From the NCBI GenBank assembly GCA_001179505.1, contig CDMY01000356.1, forward strand, positions 248,001 through 312,000: 64,000 nucleotides of DNA, given 5' to 3'. Shown here piece by piece: positions 41,588 through 53,299 of this stretch. The notes beneath the pieces are model-generated. The model worked only from the letters and a program-made list of their open reading frames with translations. It did no database searches and was not told the DNA's origin. The position numbers and the translations under genes were made by a program. Every line of letters begins with the position of its first letter. Position 1 is the stretch's first letter. Source of the stretch: Vitrella brassicaformis CCMP3155 (Eukaryota > Protista > Chromerida).

Positions 41588-42708
41588 ATGGTTCATTCGA
41601 AGTCACTTGACAGACACCGCGCACACAGACATGGACGCATTGTTTGCCCTCATTTCTCTGCTCTCTGCTCTTTGCTCTTTGCTCATGCAGCGGTGTTGGC
41701 GGGCGAGGTCAGCCGTGCGTATCCAAACTGCGGCGCCTGTTGGAGTTTTGTGGCCCCTCTCTCGGCCAACGCCTCCCTGACGGCCGCCGCCGCCATCCTC
41801 TCCTTCGACTTGAGGCCCTCCGCACCCAACTTGCGCAGATCGACTGCACGCACGACACACACAGCCATTTCCAACGAGACACCTTGTTCGCGTGTGTGTG
41901 TGTGTGTGTGTGGTACGGTCTTCGAGTTTCTCTGTTGCTATGAGTTTCTGTCTTCTCGTCTGCTTGGGCTCACTGTCGTCCAACTCGCCCTTGGCCGCCG
42001 CCTTGAGGGAGACACACACACACATACACAGAGAGACATTGCTTCGTGAGTCTGTGTGTGTGTCTGTCTGTCTGTCTGTGTCGATGTGCTACCTGTGCGA
42101 GTTGTGTGATGTTGTTGCCGTCGAGTTTGATGTTTGGTTCGCCCTCGAGGTTCTCCTCGACGTGGATGTTGACGCCGCTTGGCTGCTCGACGCCCGTCGC
42201 CTCGGCCTCGAGGACGGGGCCCGGCTCCAGCGGCAGCGAGCCTTTCACGCCCGTCTTGAAACACAGCACCTCCTCGCTCAGCGCATTCATCCACACGTTG
42301 CGCGTCTGCAGCAGAGAAGACACACACAGAGAGAGAGAGGCAGGTGCGTCATTGTGTGTGTGGCTTGTGTGTGTGCGACTCTTCGATTTGGGGCGCAGAT
42401 GAGATCGGCGAAGCCCTCGAACAAACGAATGCCTGATGAATGGATGGATGGATGGATGGCCAACTCACACAGATCGGCACACTTGTCGTCTCTCTCTGTG
42501 TGTGTGTGGCTGACCGAAGCACTTGTCGAGTCCGAATGTCTCGAGCGGCAGTCTGATGTCTTTGATGTCGTATTCCCTGTCCTTGACGGTGCCCGAGAAG
42601 AGGGCGAAGCTGGTCTTGCTGAGGATGGCCGTGTGCACACTCGACTCCATCGCCTCGACGTCAACCACAAACCGCAGCAAACCGTGCTACTCGACACACA
42701 CATCGACA

Positions 42709-42740
<32 letters not shown>

Positions 42741-42778
42741 CAGAGAGACGAATGAGTGAGTGTCGATGAACGGATTGC
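41588..42778 (-). repeat. Inverted repeat, copy A (~1.2 kb; partner at 52081-53299)
   Basis: Reverse complement of 52081-53299. Exons and introns are near-identical apart from microsatellite length and a few substitutions. Similarity starts at GCAATCCGTTCATCGACACTCACTC and decays at GAACCAT in the 3' UTR. Confidence 0.95.
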
Positions 42779-44327: not shown

Positions 44328-45096
44328 GCCGATGGTAGGCGATGCCTGATCAGGGCGGCACCTTCTCAGCAGCGCCAGAATGCTTCGACCTCAGAGGCTC
44401 GGGGTTTCTTCCAAACCCTGAACCTGAAACCCTCCGAACACATGCATTCATTCATTCATCAAAAAAGTGGTACGTTCGGTCCAACACTGTTCAAGATTCA
44501 GATACTCATCTTCATCAACCGATTTCTCGCCGAGACGTCAAGAGTCTGTCTGACTGTCTCTCTCTCCTTTGTCTGCGTGTCTAGCATTCATGCGAAAAAA
44601 GTGCCGCTACAAGTGACGTACGTCGAGCCAACGCACGGCGTGGCGTGCAGAATGCAATACACGGCAGCACGGACGGAGACAAACTCATGGCCTCTCATAA
44701 AGATGATAAACTCTTCAGAGAGGTGCACTGAAGGAGAGCAACACGTACACACGGGACCACACGACACAACAGAGACACGCACAGCAAAGGCATGTGTGCA
44801 ACAACACGCACGTGATGTCCTCGGAAAAAATGAGAAAGGAAGACCCACTTAGACCACGGCTTCATTCACCTCCTCGCTGTTTTCCTCCCCCCTCTCCTCG
44901 CTGTTTTCCTCCCCCCTCTCCTGCTGCCTGTTCCGCCGGTAACCGCTCCCTCTCAGGACCCATGGCAAAATGGAGCAGGGAGCAGCTCTTTCTCGTTAGC
45001 GCGAAAGCACTGCGACCTCCTATATCAAGGCAAAACACCAAGAACGACAGATCAGACAACTGGTGACGAGGGCAAGCATGAAAGGCACGTATCGGC

Positions 45097-48000
45097 TCAC
45101 GGGGCGGTGGGTGCTTGCGTCTGTTTGCTGGTCTCCGACTTCTCCTTTTTCGCCTTTTCCTTGGACTCGAACATCTCGAGCTGCTTATCCATGTAGGGCG
45201 CATAGATCGTCTGAAGGATGAACCGACCAACAAAGCAACCAACCAACCAACCGACAAAGTTTTGTGAGAAAAGTGGCGTGTTGTTGGTGTGTGTCTGCGT
45301 ACGCCATTTCTTCTGCCGACGACTTCGAAGGTAACTTGCTGTGACGGGCCATCCACGACCATCGCCTGGCCACTCTCAACCTGGACGGACGCACGCGACA
45401 CACATTTATGGGATTTACTGCTTCGGCGTGTGTGTGTGTGTGTGTGTGTGTGTGAAATGTGTGCTCAGGTCCTTTCTGGCGTCCCTGAGTGCCTTTGCCT
45501 TCTCCTTGTGCACCTTCTGCCGCCGGCCGTTCTGACGCAAATCCAATACATCCTGCACACACACACACGATGGCGTGAGGGAGGGAGAGACCGACAAATG
45601 GACATGCAAGGTTGCCTCCCTCCCTCCCTGCCTGCCTGCCCAGGTGTGTACCTGTAGTGTGGATTTGATTCGCTCGGAGTATCTGTCCTTGGCCTTGAGC
45701 TCCCTCATGCGTCTGCTGAAGACCGTCAACAGGCTTTTGCCGGCGTCAGTGGAGTCAAGCTTCCATCCTGCACCCATGGCGACCACACGTTGCCTGTCTG
45801 TCTGTACGTCCTCTCCCTTGATGTGTTTGTTTGTTTGTTTGTTTGTGAAGTACCGATAGTGGTGATGAGTTCGCAAAGGCACTCGATGAAGAGCTCCTCT
45901 GGACAGTAGGATGCATCCGCGCCGATGAGTGAGGTGACGACCTCTTTGACGGCCTTGGCCGACAGCAGGCGACGCAGAAACAGCTCGCCGATGAACTTGA
46001 TGTCTGATATACCGATCGCAGACAGATTGATGAATCGATGAGTGAGTGGATGGATGAATGTATGTGTGTCACATGAGATGCCCACTTCCAAGTGTTCGGT
46101 CTTTGAGTTGCTTGAGCTTGATTTCCTGGTCGGCGGGCGAGAGCTTCGTCTTGTCCTCATCGCTCAACGTCATCTTGGTCTCTGGCAACCTGTTTCCACA
46201 CACAAGCACATGAACCACGTGGGTGTGTCCGTGTGCGTCTGTGTGTGCGGTCACCTCGGTCGCTCACTTTTCGAATTCAGATTGGACCTTGTTGAGGAGC
46301 ATGTTGTAGAAGGTCCTGCGCCTCTCCTTCTCGCCTGTGAACTCCAGCGACCGCCACCTGAGGATCTGGCACAGGTCGGCATAAATCCCGCTGAAGTTAC
46401 GCTCAGACACGGCCTGCGTGAATCCAATCGAACGCACACGCCGACAGACACATGCAGAATATTCCGTATTTGTCTTGCGTCTATGCCACGGACCTTTTCG
46501 AAGACGATACCGACGAATACCTCGAGCTCCTTTTCATTCTGCAGCTGCTCGCCTAGCACAGCTGAAATCACCGCAATACAGATAGGCAAGACATACACTT
46601 ACATATGCATGCCGTCCGCCAAGCCGGCGGATCACATATCAAGCTGTTCGGCGATGCTTTCGAACGTATCGTCGGTGAGCTGGTTGAGCAAATCGTCGAT
46701 ACGTGCACCAAGGGGCACCAAAGGCTTAATGGTCCCCAAGGGGAAATCGCTGCAATCACAGCACGCCACGCACACACACAGGAGAGAGGGGGTACACATG
46801 AACACGCACATACACTCACACATCGATACACGTCCAGCTACTCCCCAGTCGGGCGCTCACCTGCTCTTCCTGGCCGCCCGTAATTCTCTTCCAGGTTGCC
46901 GCTCCACGGGCACGTCGCCCAAGTTGGCCAGCTCCAAGTTGGCCAGTTCCTCGGGCGGCTTGTTGCTCACCTACGTATATATGCACCAATCGCACCTGCG
47001 GAATGAGCAGGCGCCTATACGATTTGGTCTCCGCTTACCGGTGGCTTGTGCTGGAGGAGAGTGTCTTTGGTATAGACACAGCGAGAAGTGTCCTGAATAC
47101 AATCAGCACACAGGTAAACGGCTGTCAGTGTGTGCCGCACTGTATGTGTGTGTGTGTATGTGTGTGTGTTTGGTGGCATACGTTGCTTTCGACAGTGTTG
47201 TCCTGCACTCTTGCCGAAGCCTCGGCCATGTCCAGTCGGCTGTCCGCGTTCTGATACACATGCCACACAAACACACGTACACACAGTGGCAATGCAACGT
47301 CCCTAGTGTGTTGTGTTGTGTTGTGTTCTGCCAGTTACTTACCACCGATAGAGAGATTCGTTGAGAGCACCAAGACTCCATCGCGCGCTGGGAATCCATG
47401 CTGGTCGATTGGCGCTGACCGTATCGATACTAAAGACCGCACAATTCGCTCTTCTCTGTGTGTGTTTCCTGCCAGTCTCAGCATCGTCTGTGCACGCGTA
47501 CGTGAGGGGGGCGCGAGGCAGATCGAGAGCGCCCTCCTGGTCTAGACCGAGACTGCGAACGCCCGCGAGAGGAGGAGCACCCGTTCGTGCCCTCTGCGAA
47601 CGTGACAGCTGGCCGCTGCACATCCGCATGTTCGACCTCGTCCAGGTAGATGATCCGGACCTCCTGGGGCTTGGACGTCAACTCACCGCTGAGACACACA
47701 GCCACACACAGACACGCCGAACCTAGCGTTTATGCAGAACACGTGTTTCGTGCTGTGTGTTACGCCATGCTCTTCTTGTATCCCGCAATGGCGACGTTGC
47801 AACCCAGCTGGCGGCACTCGTCGACGACCTCAGAGAATCAGAGTCTCCTGAACCCCTGACACGTCAAATGGGGACAACAGCAACAATGCTCCAGAACAAC
47901 CTCCAGAGCAGTGCTGATTGCAGAATGTTTTGGATTACAGAATGATCCATTTGATGCCCCCCTTGACAGCGGCTGACGAAGACAAGAGGACATGCGTCCG

Positions 48001-48537
48001 GATCGATGCGTGCCGTACATATGCTTGTTAATGCTTGTACCGCGTGCCACTTCAAGAGCCCGCAAGGCTATGCCGACATCGACCCCCCGCTGTTTCCTGT
48101 TCTCCTTGAAGCCGTATTTGGTGCACATACAGATGCGTTCGTGCGCCAGACCGTTGTGGAACGCTTTCCGCCTGCGTGCTCTCCTCTCAGTGTCGGCATT
48201 GCGACCCACGACGCTCAGCCTACACAGCACGCAGGACTGCAATGAAGCACGCCACGTACGCTCCTCCCTCCTCCCCTTTCTGTGCTGACCAACCATTTGT
48301 CAGGATCAGATTCGTACAAGTACGTCTGCGATATCGGCACTCCCAGCATGTCCTCCACGTGTTTGAGGAACTCGATGAAGGCCTTGACATGTAGCTCACA
48401 GCCGTGCTTGTCCTCGTAGTCTTCCTGAACAACACACAATGTCATCGCATCCTTCCTTCGTTCAGCATGCTGATTCCAACCCAGATGTTTGCCCCGTCAA
48501 AGATGGCCACAGCTTTGTCCCTGGCTGACGTTGCCAT
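45097..48537 (-). CDS. NYN (LabA/DUF88-like) ribonuclease domain fused to an eIF4G-like protein (4E-binding motif plus MIF4G), multi-exon, with an apparent 1-nt frameshift at 47836-47837
   Basis: NYN motifs: AVAIFDGANIW, KQRGVDVGIA, WIILGSGDSD[F]SEVVDECRQLGCNVAIAG, RIIYLDE. YTKDTLL lies at 47054-47074. MIF4G motifs: LLNQLTDDTFE, IVFEKAVSERNFSGIYADLC, FYNMLLNKVQSEFE, RTLGNIKFIGELF, EELFIECLCELITTIG, LQDVLDLRQN. Confidence 0.75.
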
Positions 48538-49069
48538 CCCAACCCGACCGCTCGAAGCCCCAGATCTGGCCAGATCGTCGTTCCTACTTTTCCCGCTTAG
48601 AGCAGAGAGGACGAGTTACACGGGCGAGCTGCAAGACATGAGTTTGTAATGCTTGTGGACCCAAGCTTGTGTGTCCATGACACCTCCGTCGTCACGAATG
48701 CTTGTCAGTCACTACCCCGAGCTACTGCTGATACTCCAACTATGCCCGCTGCCCCAAGAGCTGTGGCACGTGTACGATTTCAGATATGACACACAAGGTC
48801 CCACCAAAAGTTTCCCACACATGAATTGCCTCGCAACACCACTCTTTTGTGGCATCGCGACGTCACAAACACACACCAAAAATACGCACATGAACAGCAT
48901 GCAGGCCACTGGGACTATCGACAAGCAGAACGGGCCACTGCACTGCACTGCTGTCATCTCCCTGTCTTGCCGTCTCGCGACGCGACGCAACGAAAAAGGG
49001 GACAAACCGCACAGGACCTGATTTCTGCCTCTCACTCACTCACCCATGCACTCACTCACTCACTCACAG

Positions 49070-51554: not shown

Positions 51555-53215
51555 ATGCGAGAGCTGTTGGTAAGCGAAGGTATACGGGACTGAAAAGAAA
51601 CGAAACGATGTGTTTCTTTCATGTGTGCATGGATCTGGTGTTGCAGTACACGTTGGTGGGCTTCATGGCCATCGCCTCGCTGCCTGCCTACCACAGCTTG
51701 GGTAACATCGGGTGAGCTTCGCAAGATCTGGCTGTTTGGCGTCGGGGGTTACACCAAGTTTGTGTCCATGGCCATGCAGCAAGTACCTTCGTCGGCTGCG
51801 TGCCGAGCAGAGGGAGGAGGTCAAGAGAAAAGGCAGGCCCGAGGAATCACGGCTGACGGCAGTGGTCATGCGACAAGATTTGTGCATCTTCCTCTGACAG
51901 CAAGGGCACATCAGCCAGCCAAGCCGTCCGTGCAGGCAGTGTGTGTCGGGGGGTGAAGTCCTGGGGAGGGGCTCGACTTCGTTAGGTTGATAGCGTGCAG
52001 ACTCATGCTGGGTTTTGTAGTCTGGACATCGATACACATATCGGCCTTAATGATCTGTTTCTCTACTCGTCTGGAGACGGGCAATCCGTTCATCGACACT
52101 CACTCATTCGTCTCTCTCTCTCTCTCTGTGTATGTGTGTGTGTGTGTCGATGTGTGTGTCGAGTAGCACGGTTTGCTGCGGTTTGTGGTTGACGTCGAGG
52201 CGATGGAGTCGAGTGTGCACACGGCCATCCTCAGCAAGACCAGCTTCGCCCTCTTCTCGGGCACCGTCAAGGACAGGGAATACGACATCAAAGACATCAG
52301 ACTGCCGCTCGAGACATTCGGACTCGACAAGTGCTTCGGTCAGCCACACACACACTCGAGAGACGACAAGTGTGCCGATCTGAGTGAGTTGGCCATCCAT
52401 CCATCCATCCATTCATCAGGCATTCGTTTGTTCGAGGGCTTCGCCGATCTCATCTGCGCCCCAAACCGAAGAGTCGCACACACACGAGCCACACACACAA
52501 TGACGCACCTGCCTCTCTCTCTGTGTGTGTCTTCTCTGCTGCAGACGCGCAACGTGTGGATGAATGCGCTGAGCGAGGAGGTGCTGTGTTTCAAGACGGG
52601 CGTGAAAGGCTCGCTGCCGCTGGAGCCGGGCCCCGTCCTCGAGGCCGAGGCGACGGGCGTCGAGCAGCCAAGCGGCGTCAACATCCACGTCGAGGAGAAC
52701 CTCGAGGGCGAACCAAACATCAAACTCGACGGCATCAACATCACACAACTCGCACAGGTAGCACATCGACACACACAGACACAGACACACACACACAGAC
52801 ACACAGACACACAGACACACAGACACACACACACAGACACACACACACACAGACTGACGAAGCAATGTCTCTCTGTGTCTGTGTGTGTGTCGCCCTCAAG
52901 GCGGCGGCCAAGGGCGAGTTGGACGACAGTGAGCCCAAGCAGACGAGACGACAGAAACTCATCGCAACAGAGAAACTCGAAGACCGTACCACACACACAC
53001 ACACACACGAACAAGGTGTCTCGTTGGAAATGGCTGTGTGTGTCGTGCGTGCAGTCGATCTGCGCAAGTTGGGTGCGGAGGGCCTCAAGTCGAAGGAGCG
53101 GATGGCGGCGGCGGCCGTCAGGGAGGCGTTGGCCGAGAGAGGCGCAGTCAAACTCCAACAGGCGCCGCAGTTTGGATACGCACGGCTGACCTCGCCCGCC
53201 AACACCGCTGCTTGA
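51555..53215 (+). CDS. Secreted PH-like protein, paralog B, with 3' exons shared with paralog A and different, uncertain 5' exons
   Basis: 5' exons MRELL|YTLVGFMAIASLPAYHSLGNIG look like a signal peptide. From 52081 the sequence is nearly identical to paralog A (LDGINITQ vs LDGNNITQ; GAVKLQQ vs GATKLQQ). How the 5' exons splice onto the shared part is not clear. Confidence 0.5.
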
Positions 53216-53299
53216 GCAAAGAGCAAAGAGCAGAGAAATGAGGACAAGCAATGCGTCCATCTATGTGTGCGCGGTGTCAAGTGGCTTTGAACGAACCAT
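52081..53299 (+). repeat. Inverted repeat, copy B (~1.2 kb; partner at 41588-42778)
   Basis: Direct visual alignment to the reverse complement of copy A. Confidence 0.95.

What the first reader, a model, noticed from the sequence alone, without database searches (positions are those of the whole stretch)
45097..48537. NYN ribonuclease fused to an eIF4G-like cap-complex scaffold (NYN + YxxxxL-phi + MIF4G)
SEEN: the ORF track misses this gene. Hand splicing on the minus strand gives MATSARDKAVAIFDGANIW|EDYEDKHG...DKW|LSVVG...KQRGVDVGIALRALEVAR|AAVKGGIKWIIL|GSGDSD[F]SEVVDECRQLGCNVAIAGYKKSMA|GELTSKPQEVRIIYLDE...RSRSASRPPH|YRYGQRQ...|NADSRL...|DTSRCVYTKDTLLQHKPP|VSNKPPEEL...|SDFPLG...IDDLLNQLT. 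The introns from the NYN exons to the first MIF4G exon are GT-AG and in phase, and there is no stop between the domains once one missing T at 47836-37 is restored. KNOWN: DgxN, KgVD and SGDxDF carry the catalytic acids of NYN/LabA-DUF88 PIN-like RNases, and all are present. YxxxxL-phi upstream of MIF4G is the canonical eIF4E-binding site of eIF4G. INFERENCE: a protein that docks on eIF4E-bound caps and carries its own endoribonuclease could couple cap recognition to mRNA cleavage or silencing, as a decoy eIF4G or in stage-specific or antiviral decay. I know of no described NYN-eIF4G fusion.
Basis: partly seen in the sequence, partly recalled or inferred. Interest (0 to 1): 0.85.

Follow-up and report, generated by a model that had tools for sequence, protein, structure and literature searches.

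The report
Broken, transcribed NYN–eIF4G-like chimeric gene
In the alga Vitrella brassicaformis one spliced messenger RNA does carry an RNA-cutting (NYN) domain followed by an eIF4G-type scaffold domain, but three genuine defects break its reading frame, so it is most likely a decaying chimeric gene and not a working cap-docked nuclease.

Summary
The window is Vitrella brassicaformis CCMP3155 scaffold CDMY01000356.1. Ten of ten junctions are confirmed, and one 18-exon mRNA (48584..44433, minus strand) carries NYN-like exons, a linker with YTKDTLL, and an eIF4G-type MIF4G domain.

The reading frame is broken three times, and none of the breaks is an assembly error.
1. The "missing T" after 47837 is also absent from three full-length transcript contigs, three RNA-like contig sets and an independent DNA run.
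2. An ex-intron at 46639..46562 now starts AT instead of GT. It is retained and puts TGA and TAA in frame inside the MIF4G domain.
3. An ex-intron at 45468..45381 now starts CT. It is retained and adds a TAA.

From the first AUG the mRNA encodes only a 167-aa truncated NYN fragment (UniProt A0A7S1KBB3).

The locus is already public as CEM05221.1 / A0A0G4F0S4, a 628-aa "MIF4G domain-containing protein". That model bridges each defect with a cryptic intron that no transcript shows.

Intact relatives of both halves exist separately in Vitrella. No intact NYN–MIF4G protein was found among the relatives of the NYN half in 1.84 billion representative proteins.

Verdict: this is a transcribed, recently disabled chimeric gene. 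The architecture is real. The proposed function is unsupported.

The parts
44433..48584 (-). Whole transcription unit. It has 18 exons: 48584-48481, 48424-48294, 48219-48041, 47972-47939, 47855-47764, 47688-47502, 47429-47343, 47250-47182, 47092-47039, 46970-46861, 46749-46494, 46413-46268, 46189-46086, 46003-45854, 45767-45652, 45552-45303, 45210-45101, 45019-44433. The 17 introns are all GT-AG and 56-111 nt long.
   Evidence: Joints. JGI transcript contigs L001 and L002 are 100% identical to the rebuilt mRNA.
47678..48537 (-). ORF A is the only ORF reached from the first AUG. It gives 167 aa (P0001, UniProt A0A7S1KBB3). These are the N-terminal three quarters of a NYN domain (FDGAN 48501-48487, RGVDVG 48089-48072, GSGDSD 47854-47837) followed by 27 out-of-frame residues. 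The stop TGA is at 47680-47678.
   Evidence: Pfam NYN scores 15.3 bits, below the 24.2 cut-off. A family HMM of the paralogs scores 76.5 bits.
47836..47837 (-). Lesion 1. A 1-nt deletion in a T run gives GAT|TC where the paralogs read GD(S/K)(D/G)-F-SE. It shifts the rest of the NYN domain into another frame.
   Evidence: Alignments. No indel in RNA or in DNA run X4. L001 and L002 are identical.
47637..47837 (-). The C-terminal quarter of the NYN domain (FSEVVDECRQLG...RIIYLDE) lies in the frame of segment B. It is spliced across intron 47763-47689.
   Evidence: Family HMM 62.5 bits for this piece alone and 148.9 bits for A+X+B, against 4 bits or less for shuffles. Alignment.
46635..47837 (-). 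Segment B is a 232-codon stop-to-stop stretch. It holds the NYN C-terminus, an Arg/Ser-rich linker, YTKDTLL and the first MIF4G helix (IDDLLNQLT 46700-46674).
   Evidence: JGI called a 209-aa ORF on it, P0068.
47054..47074 (-). YTKDTLL, a match to the eIF4E-binding consensus YxxxxL-phi. It lies 65 residues upstream of the MIF4G start in the conceptual protein.
   Evidence: The motif arises in 3.5% of shuffles of the 160-aa linker.
46562..46639 (-). Lesion 2. A 78-nt ex-intron starts ATATGT (not GT) and ends TTTCAG. It is retained in all transcripts and puts TGA (46634-46632) and TAA (46601-46599) in frame.
   Evidence: Exon 46749-46494 is contiguous in X7, X8, L001 and L002. Site detail. A paralog mRNA end in X8 reads ..EVIAEKLAQQ|GEQLQNE without interruption (table 7).
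45418..46598 (-). Segment C is 252 codons (P0002). It holds the rest of the eIF4G-type MIF4G domain. Its first Met is at 46302.
   Evidence: Pfam MIF4G 92.8 bits, E 3e-26. The best solved relatives are the human eIF4G1 and eIF4GII MIF4G domains, E about 1e-24.
45381..45468 (-). Lesion 3. An 88-nt ex-intron with a (CA)n tract starts CTGAGC (not GT) and ends GTCCAG. It is retained and gives TAA at 45417-45415.
   Evidence: Exon 45552-45303 is contiguous in L001 and L002. The paralog-derived contig L083/P0070 leaves the window sequence exactly after 45469 and continues in frame.
44953..45380 (-). Segment D holds the former C-terminal tail exons (VESGQAMV...FVGRRNGTIYAPYMDKQ...). They are now in a different frame from C, downstream of its stop. 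The conceptual stop is at 44955-44953.
   Evidence: It is homologous to the in-frame tail of P0070..FVGRRTDTIYEPYMDRQ...
44874..44921 (-). A 24-nt tandem duplication lies downstream of the conceptual stop, in the 3' untranslated part of the mRNA. The transcript variant P0003 has one copy.

Best explanation
This is a lineage-specific chimeric gene of Vitrella brassicaformis. Its 5' half comes from a small Vitrella family in which an N-terminal LabA/MARF1-type NYN domain is followed by different C-terminal modules. Its 3' half is a copy of a short eIF4G-like gene with a YxxxxL-phi motif, a MIF4G domain and a conserved tail. The locus is still transcribed from one promoter, and 17 introns are spliced. 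It has since acquired three independent frame-breaking lesions: a 1-nt deletion inside the NYN core, and G-to-A and G-to-C changes at the first base of two intron donors. Those two introns are now retained and bring in stop codons. Standard translation from the first AUG therefore gives only a 167-aa NYN fragment. That fragment lacks the last helix and two strands of the fold, and the MIF4G part is not reached. Shown here: the transcript structure, the three lesions in independent DNA and RNA, the homology of every piece, and the existence of intact paralogs of both halves. Inferred: that the locus is a recently disabled, still-expressed pseudogene; that the lesions are mutations of once-functional sites; and that the fusion may or may not ever have been functional.
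For: L001 and L002, from two JGI samples, are 100% identical to the rebuilt 18-exon mRNA.

Lesion 1: there is no indel in the RNA contigs X1, X7 and X8 or in DNA run X4. The paralogs P0005, P0006 and P0010 read GDSGFSEVVDKCRQL, GDKDFSDTIDDC and GDSDFSEAVDKCRQL across the site. A family HMM gives 76.5 bits before the break, 62.5 bits after it in the other frame, and 148.9 bits when joined with X.

Lesions 2 and 3: these are contiguous exons in every transcript. The would-be introns are 78 and 88 nt, within the 56-111 nt range of the real ones. They end in a normal acceptor but begin AT and CT. Paralog transcripts are spliced or continuous at exactly those positions (table 7).

Reading through the three lesions conceptually gives one 677-codon ORF with no stop. 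The other two frames have 10 and 21 stops over the same span.

The public model CEM05221.1 is reproduced exactly only by adding three cryptic introns (47795..47689, 46708..46562, 45513..45381) that no transcript contig contains.

phmmer of the NYN part against 1.84e9 representatives finds only three Vitrella paralog clusters, none with MIF4G.
Against: All RNA evidence is assembled contigs, which drop rare isoforms. Low-level use of the cryptic or non-canonical sites cannot be excluded. The sequence on both sides of each lesion is still well conserved, and there are no further stops in 677 codons. The lesions are therefore recent, or some selection persists. The transcript seems reasonably abundant and fully spliced, which is not expected of a strong nonsense-mediated-decay target. 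All data may derive from one or two cultured isolates, so an intact allele in nature is not excluded. No test of relaxed selection was possible.
Confidence: 0.7

Rival explanations
1. One reading: the locus encodes an intact NYN-eIF4G-like fusion protein, the frameshift is an assembly error, and the protein docks on eIF4E-bound caps and cleaves mRNA.
For: There is a single transcript, in-phase junctions from the NYN part to the first MIF4G exon, the NYN acidic motifs and YTKDTLL. The conceptual 677-codon ORF is open once the lesions are bridged.
Against: The frameshift is present in independent DNA (X4) and in all RNA assemblies: X1, X7, X8, L001, L002 and UniProt A0A7S1KBB3. Two more interruptions with in-frame stops lie inside and after the MIF4G domain.
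Confidence: 0.03
2. A minor splice isoform like the public model CEM05221.1 (628 aa) is made. It would act as an eIF4G-like scaffold or decoy with a crippled, non-catalytic NYN remnant at its N-terminus.
For: The three cryptic donors (GTCGCC at 47795, GTGCAC at 46708, GTGCAC at 45513) exist and give an open 628-codon frame. Contigs cannot exclude rare isoforms (notes).
Against: None of the three junctions appears in any of six transcript assemblies. The model replaces 25 core NYN residues with 14 out-of-frame residues and deletes the first MIF4G helix, so Pfam sees profile positions 38-202 only. Both domains would be damaged.
Confidence: 0.12
3. The locus is functional in its present form. Either the 167-aa NYN fragment or an internally initiated MIF4G protein has a role, or the spliced RNA itself is regulatory, for example as an unproductive, nuclease-limiting transcript.
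For: Expression and splicing are stable in several data sets. ORF A keeps D14, D110 and D138/D140. Earlier unverified notes of this scan report other Vitrella NYN genes whose transcripts also carry frame-breaking introns or stops.
Against: ORF A lacks the helix and the two strands after SGDSD that complete the PIN-like sheet, and its AF2 model is poor, with mean pLDDT 54 and under 35 after residue 140. The first Met of segment C lies inside the MIF4G domain, behind many upstream AUGs. There is no direct evidence of any product.
Confidence: 0.12
4. Translational recoding, by a -1 frameshift at GAT|TCT plus stop-codon read-through, restores the full-length protein.
For: Re-reading one T would give exactly the paralog-like ...GDSD-F-SE....
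Against: There is no slippery X XXY YYZ heptamer at the site. Three further stop codons of two kinds (one TGA, two TAA) would also have to be read through. Ordinary exons of this gene show no in-frame stops, so the genetic code is standard.
Confidence: 0.02

Closest known systems
Vitrella brassicaformis NYN paralogs CEM20293.1 (477 aa), CEM03385.1 (456 aa, NYN + TLDc) and CEM15010.1 (618 aa)
   Same: All have an N-terminal LabA/MARF1-type NYN domain with the same motifs (DGA, DPDKW, RG-D, GD-DFSE, VAI-GY, GELK-KP, RII-LD). Identity to ORF A is 35-38%, and about 60% in the last third. Each is followed by a different C-terminal module.
   Different: The paralogs have the whole domain in one frame and pass Pfam NYN at about 39 bits. 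None carries a MIF4G domain. The window copy is frameshifted.
MARF1 NYN domain (PDB 5YAA, 6FDL) and LabA-like VPA0982 (PDB 2QIP)
   Same: These are the best structural matches of the AF2 model of the intact paralog's domain: Foldseek E 1e-5 to 5e-3, TM by target 0.56-0.65. The fold is PIN-like, with acidic residues at the strand ends.
   Different: Sequence identity is only 12-16%, and the model has moderate confidence (pLDDT 60). MARF1 pairs its NYN domain with RRM and LOTUS domains, not with MIF4G.
eIF4G middle domain (HEAT-1/MIF4G; human eIF4G1, eIF4GII, DAP5)
   Same: Segment C matches Pfam MIF4G at 92.8 bits and the human eIF4G1/eIF4GII MIF4G structures at E about 1e-24. A YxxxxL-phi motif lies upstream, as in eIF4G.
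   Different: It is much shorter than canonical eIF4G and has no MA3 or W2 domain. The first helix is separated from the rest by stops. Binding to eIF4E and eIF4A is untested.
Short eIF4G-like proteins P0012 (536 aa) and P0013 (359 aa), and the Vitrella paralog seen in P0003 and P0070
   Same: They share the layout of MIF4G followed by a ..VGRR/GQRP..Y..KEKE tail. MIF4G identity is 46-49% to P0012 and P0013, and 75-100% to the Vitrella paralog.
   Different: Those proteins are continuous ORFs, and their Pfam annotation lists only MIF4G, no NYN. The paralog is spliced or continuous where the window copy retains ex-introns.
Tetrahymena Smg6L (Est1 domain + NYN nuclease in nonsense-mediated decay; PMC5499736)
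   Same: It is an alveolate example of a NYN nuclease recruited to mRNA surveillance by fusion to another module.
   Different: It belongs to the Zc3h12a-like NYN subtype, its nuclease is C-terminal, its partner is an Est1 domain rather than MIF4G, and it is functional and tested.
Public gene model CEM05221.1 / UniProt A0A0G4F0S4
   Same: It covers the same locus (48537..44953) and shares the 16 RNA-supported introns.
   Different: It bridges each lesion with a cryptic intron not seen in any transcript. It is therefore a computational patch and not the observed mRNA.

Membership tests
NYN domain (Pfam PF01936, LabA/MARF1 type) | Profile match above Pfam's gathering score on the locus's own product | tested here: not met
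   ORF A (P0001) scores 15.3 bits against a cut-off of 24.2. The public model P0069 gives no NYN hit. Single exons give none.
NYN domain (Pfam PF01936, LabA/MARF1 type) | Significant homology to proteins that do pass the profile | tested here: met
   phmmer gives E 2.5e-12 to P0005, and P0005, P0007 and P0010 pass Pfam NYN at 38.5-39.4 bits. The family HMM gives 76.5 + 62.5 bits for the two pieces, against 4 or less for shuffles.
NYN domain (Pfam PF01936, LabA/MARF1 type) | PIN-like alpha/beta fold | tested here: inconclusive
   The model of ORF A is poor, pLDDT 54. The model of intact paralog P0005 (pLDDT 60, pTM 0.62) best matches 2QIP and the MARF1 NYN domain.
NYN domain (Pfam PF01936, LabA/MARF1 type) | Conserved acidic residues (DxxN, GxD, SGDxD) | tested here: met
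   FDGAN, RGVDVG and GSGDSD are present. D14, D110 and D138 are invariant in the alignment with the paralogs. Their catalytic role is taken from the literature on the family and was not tested.
NYN domain (Pfam PF01936, LabA/MARF1 type) | Whole domain encoded in one reading frame of the mRNA | tested here: not met
   A 1-nt deletion at 47837/47836 is confirmed in DNA and RNA.
eIF4G family (MIF4G/HEAT-1 with eIF4E-binding site) | MIF4G profile above the gathering score | tested here: met
   Segment C (P0002) scores 92.8 bits against 30.8, covering profile positions 37-202 of 203.
eIF4G family (MIF4G/HEAT-1 with eIF4E-binding site) | Closest solved relatives are eIF4G rather than CBP80, UPF2 or NOT1 MIF4G domains | tested here: met
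   The best hits are eIF4G1, eIF4GII, DAP5 and yeast eIF4G, at E 1.7e-24 to 1.9e-10.
eIF4G family (MIF4G/HEAT-1 with eIF4E-binding site) | YxxxxL-phi motif upstream of MIF4G that binds eIF4E | tested here: inconclusive
   The motif YTKDTLL is present at 47074-47054. It arises in 3.5% of linker shuffles. BLASTP finds no significant linker similarity to P0012. Binding cannot be tested here.
eIF4G family (MIF4G/HEAT-1 with eIF4E-binding site) | Complete MIF4G domain in one reading frame, reachable from an upstream start | tested here: not met
   The first helix lies in segment B. The rest follows TGA and TAA in the retained 46639..46562.
eIF4G family (MIF4G/HEAT-1 with eIF4E-binding site) | MA3 and W2 C-terminal domains of canonical eIF4G | tested here: not met
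   No such Pfam hits on segments C or D, or on P0069. The architecture is the short eIF4G-like type.
Transcribed (unprocessed) pseudogene / decaying chimeric gene | Frame-disrupting lesions verified in independent DNA and RNA | tested here: met
   Three lesions.
Transcribed (unprocessed) pseudogene / decaying chimeric gene | Intact paralogs of the disabled parts exist | tested here: met
   NYN: CEM20293, CEM03385 and CEM15010. eIF4G-like: paralog sequence in P0003, P0070/L083 and X8 variant contigs.
Transcribed (unprocessed) pseudogene / decaying chimeric gene | Relaxed selection or absence of protein product | not testable with these tools
   No paralog nucleotide sequence of sufficient length was available, and there are no population, proteomic or ribosome-profiling data.

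The most novel reading that the evidence does not exclude
The NYN-eIF4G-like fusion was, until very recently, a working protein, and may still be one in other Vitrella isolates or in wild populations. It would be an endoribonuclease delivered to eIF4E-bound caps or to eIF4A through an eIF4G-like scaffold. On this reading the sequenced culture carries a freshly inactivated allele. Support: 677 codons stay open once the three lesions are bridged, the junction between the two halves is in phase, and both domains are still well conserved around the lesions.
Probability: 0.12. Interest if true: 0.7.

Novelty: new member of a known kind. Interest (0 to 1): 0.28.

Why it matters
If the fusion were intact, it would be an undescribed way of coupling cap-complex recognition to mRNA cleavage. 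What the evidence shows is more modest but still useful.

1. A domain architecture that looks novel, and that exists in UniProt as a 628-aa model, rests on three cryptic introns that no transcript supports. Domain-architecture surveys that include this protein would be misled.
2. Vitrella has a small species-restricted family in which a LabA/MARF1-type NYN domain is joined to varied C-terminal modules, including TLDc and here an eIF4G-like part. This locus shows exon shuffling in that family and the rapid death of one product.
3. The locus is a clean natural example of intron retention caused by single-base changes at donor position +1.

Tried and rejected
- Pfam on single exons gave only partial MIF4G hits and no NYN hit. 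This was too fragmentary, so I replaced it with transcript-derived ORFs.
- NCBIfam gave nothing useful.
- phmmer and a profile of the NYN part against PDB sequences gave no significant hit. The linker likewise gave none.
- The AF2 model of ORF A was too poor to search.
- BLASTP of the linker and of the tail against the short eIF4G-like P0012 was not significant. I therefore do not claim that the 4E-motif region is homologous to other species' proteins.
- I tried to fetch the eIF4G-like paralog's own transcript. An exact 30-mer from the X8 loose end was absent from metagenome contigs. A protein-guided scan returned only distant eIF4G loci at 30-42% identity. P0003 and P0001 are not on record in the look-up of encoding contigs. 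I therefore could not tell whether the paralog has a NYN domain upstream.
- Assembly error is rejected.
- An alternative genetic code is rejected, because the other exons are free of in-frame stops.
- Alternative acceptors or donors that would repair the NYN frame without losing core residues do not exist (reading of the sequence).
- A literature search for NYN together with MIF4G found no described fusion.
Full report
**Origin and context**

The window is 100% identical to Vitrella brassicaformis CCMP3155 scaffold CDMY01000356.1 (locus L084). The finding lies between a gene for an Aminotran_5 protein upstream and a DUF3464 protein downstream.

**Transcript structure**

Three sets of public contigs (X1, X7, X8) lie on the stretch with GT-AG skips, so they are spliced RNA. 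Run X4, from another study, lies on it unspliced at an even depth of about 12.8, so it is DNA. All 14 listed joints resolve to canonical GT..AG introns on the minus strand, and I placed the three unlisted ones by their GT-AG ends.

The mRNA rebuilt from these 17 introns is 100% identical over 2595 nt to two full-length JGI transcript contigs from different samples, L001 (2768 nt) and L002 (2760 nt). The transcription unit runs from about 48584 to 44433 and has 18 exons. NYN exons and MIF4G exons are on one RNA, including a splice (47501..47430) that joins the two halves.

**The reading frame is broken three times**

The mRNA holds four homology-bearing stop-to-stop pieces.
- Piece A runs from ATG 48537 and gives 167 aa, with a TGA stop at 47680-47678.
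- Piece B covers 47837..46635 (232 codons).
- Piece C covers 46598..45418 (252 codons).
- Piece D covers 45464..44956.

Lesion 1. After GSGDSD (47854-47837) the mRNA reads GAT|TCT CTG. The three intact Vitrella paralogs read GD(S/K)(D/G)-F-SE, followed by a highly conserved helix, strand and strand. In the window this continuation lies in the frame of piece B. A family HMM built from the three paralogs gives these scores:

| Sequence scored | Bits |
|---|---|
| Part before the break | 76.5 |
| First 60 residues after the break, in the other frame | 62.5 |
| The two joined with X | 148.9 |
| 200 shuffles | 4 or less |

The base is nevertheless truly absent. There is no indel in X1, X7 or X8. 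DNA contig X4 record 10 (47178-48741) has no difference from the window. L001 and L002 and the UniProt transcript-derived entry A0A7S1KBB3 (P0001) all end in the out-of-frame tail.

Lesion 2. Exon 46749-46494 is contiguous in every transcript. Inside it lies a 78-nt segment, 46639..46562, which ends in a normal acceptor (TTTCAG) but begins ATATGT. It carries TGA (46634-46632) and TAA (46601-46599) in frame. Removing it would join ...FESIAEQL-A-VLGEQLQNE..., a normal MIF4G first-helix-to-second-helix connection. A paralog mRNA end in X8 reads ...EVIAEKLAQQ|GEQLQNE without interruption (table 7).

Lesion 3. Exon 45552-45303 is also contiguous. It contains an 88-nt CA-rich segment, 45468..45381, which ends GTCCAG but begins CTGAGC and gives TAA at 45417-45415. 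The JGI contig L083 (product P0070) is a chimera of this transcript and a close paralog. It leaves the window sequence exactly after 45469 and continues in frame with ...SDIRED|VKREEAMGG...FVGRRTDTIYEPYMDRQ..., which is homologous to piece D (...VESGQAMV...VGRRNGTIYAPYMDKQ...). The ancestral intron position is thus fixed.

Bridging the three lesions conceptually (X at the deletion, both segments dropped) gives one 677-codon ORF without a stop. The other two frames have 10 and 21 stops over the same span. The lesions are therefore recent events in what was one long frame.

**What the pieces are**

NYN half. Pfam scores ORF A at only 15.3 bits, below the 24.2 cut-off. A phmmer search of 1.84 billion representative proteins finds three paralog clusters, all from Vitrella, and these pass Pfam NYN at 38.5-39.4 bits:
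- CEM20293.1 (477 aa)
- CEM03385.1 (456 aa, NYN + TLDc)
- CEM15010.1 (618 aa)

An AF2 model of the intact paralog domain has moderate confidence (pLDDT 60, pTM 0.62). It best matches the LabA-like protein 2QIP (E 1e-5) and the MARF1 NYN domain 5YAA/6FDL. None of the paralogs has a MIF4G domain.

eIF4G-like half. Piece C scores 92.8 bits on Pfam MIF4G. Its best solved relatives are the human eIF4G1 and eIF4GII middle domains, at E about 1e-24. The nearest database proteins outside Vitrella are short eIF4G-like proteins at 46-49% identity, and ordinary eIF4G proteins follow at about 35-39%.

The motif. YTKDTLL (47074-47054) fits YxxxxL-phi. Such a match arises in 3.5% of shuffles of the linker. 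The linker has no significant similarity to other species' proteins. The motif is suggestive only.

A close Vitrella paralog. It shows up as variant contigs in X8 whose differences reproduce those of P0003. It also shows up in the chimeric assemblies P0003 and P0070/L083.

**The public annotation**

The locus is already annotated as CEM05221.1 / A0A0G4F0S4, a 628-aa "MIF4G domain-containing protein". I could reproduce that protein exactly only one way. I kept 16 RNA-supported introns and added three others: 47795..47689, 46708..46562 and 45513..45381. Each starts at a cryptic GT just upstream of one lesion. None of these junctions occurs in any of the six transcript assemblies.

The model swaps 25 core NYN residues for 14 out-of-frame ones and drops the first MIF4G helix. 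Pfam sees only MIF4G in it. The fusion is therefore in public databases, but as a computational patch.

**Interpretation**

Best explanation (about 0.7): this is a chimeric gene made by joining a member of the Vitrella NYN-plus-variable-tail family to a copy of a short eIF4G-like gene. It is still transcribed and spliced but was recently disabled by three independent mutations. The only product reachable by ordinary scanning is a 167-aa NYN fragment. That fragment lacks the last helix and two strands of the PIN-like sheet, and its model is disordered after residue 136.

Whether the fusion ever worked is open. The open frame across the junction could be inherited from the two parent genes plus a one-in-three chance of matching phase.

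Rivals:
- A rare model-like isoform giving an eIF4G-like decoy with a dead NYN stub (0.12).
- Function of the truncated products or of the RNA itself (0.12).
- An intact fusion hidden by sequencing error (0.03, contradicted).
- Recoding (0.02).

**Caveats**

All RNA evidence is from assembled contigs, which cannot exclude rare isoforms. The cultures behind the data sets may share one origin. I could not retrieve the paralog's genomic locus, so I could not test whether it has a NYN domain upstream.

Earlier first-stage notes of this scan mention another PIN-MIF4G candidate and other Vitrella NYN genes with frame-breaking introns. I did not test them and use them only as leads.

**Novelty and score**

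The literature search found no described NYN-MIF4G fusion. The only such protein I saw is the patched model of this locus. The architecture is new on paper, but the locus does not encode it intact. I score interest at 0.28. This is a real, instructive case of gene birth and decay and a warning about the annotation. It is not a new mechanism.

Noticed in passing
window 41588-42778 and 52081-53299: An inverted repeat of about 1.2 kb at 92-97% identity flanks a 9.3-kb segment. That segment holds the DUF3464 gene, the NYN-MIF4G gene and the Aminotran_5 gene. ORFs inside the repeat arms have no Pfam hit.
   Followed up: partly
L083 (JGI Ga0186270_102284) 1813-2608; P0070; P0003: Transcript assemblies are chimeras between this locus and a close eIF4G-like paralog, which is 75-100% identical exon by exon. 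The paralog has an intact C-terminal tail with a long Gln/Pro/Ala-rich extension. Its genomic locus and N-terminus were not recovered.
   Followed up: partly
P0005, P0006, P0010 (CEM20293.1, CEM03385.1, CEM15010.1): This is a small NYN family found only in Vitrella among 1.84e9 representative proteins. A LabA/MARF1-type NYN domain at the N-terminus is followed by unrelated C-terminal parts: TLDc in one, a low-complexity tail in another, and an unassigned roughly 350-aa region in the third.
   Followed up: partly
window 44874-44921 (minus strand): A 24-nt perfect tandem duplication lies in the 3' untranslated part. The transcript variant behind P0003 has a single copy and one fewer CA-repeat unit at 45416-45466. 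This suggests length polymorphism or assembly collapse.
   Followed up: no
window 47300-47335, 47130-47180, 45416-45466, 45800-45850 and others: CA/CAAA microsatellites are frequent in the introns of this gene and break the short-read assemblies there. Read laying masked 45221-45261, 45416-45466 and 45608-45645.
   Followed up: no
window 48695-48741: The RNA contigs X7 and X8 have high depth (615-1330) and loose ends just upstream of the gene's 5' end. These could come from a repeat or from an abundant unrelated transcript that shares this short stretch (tables 2 and 7).
   Followed up: no
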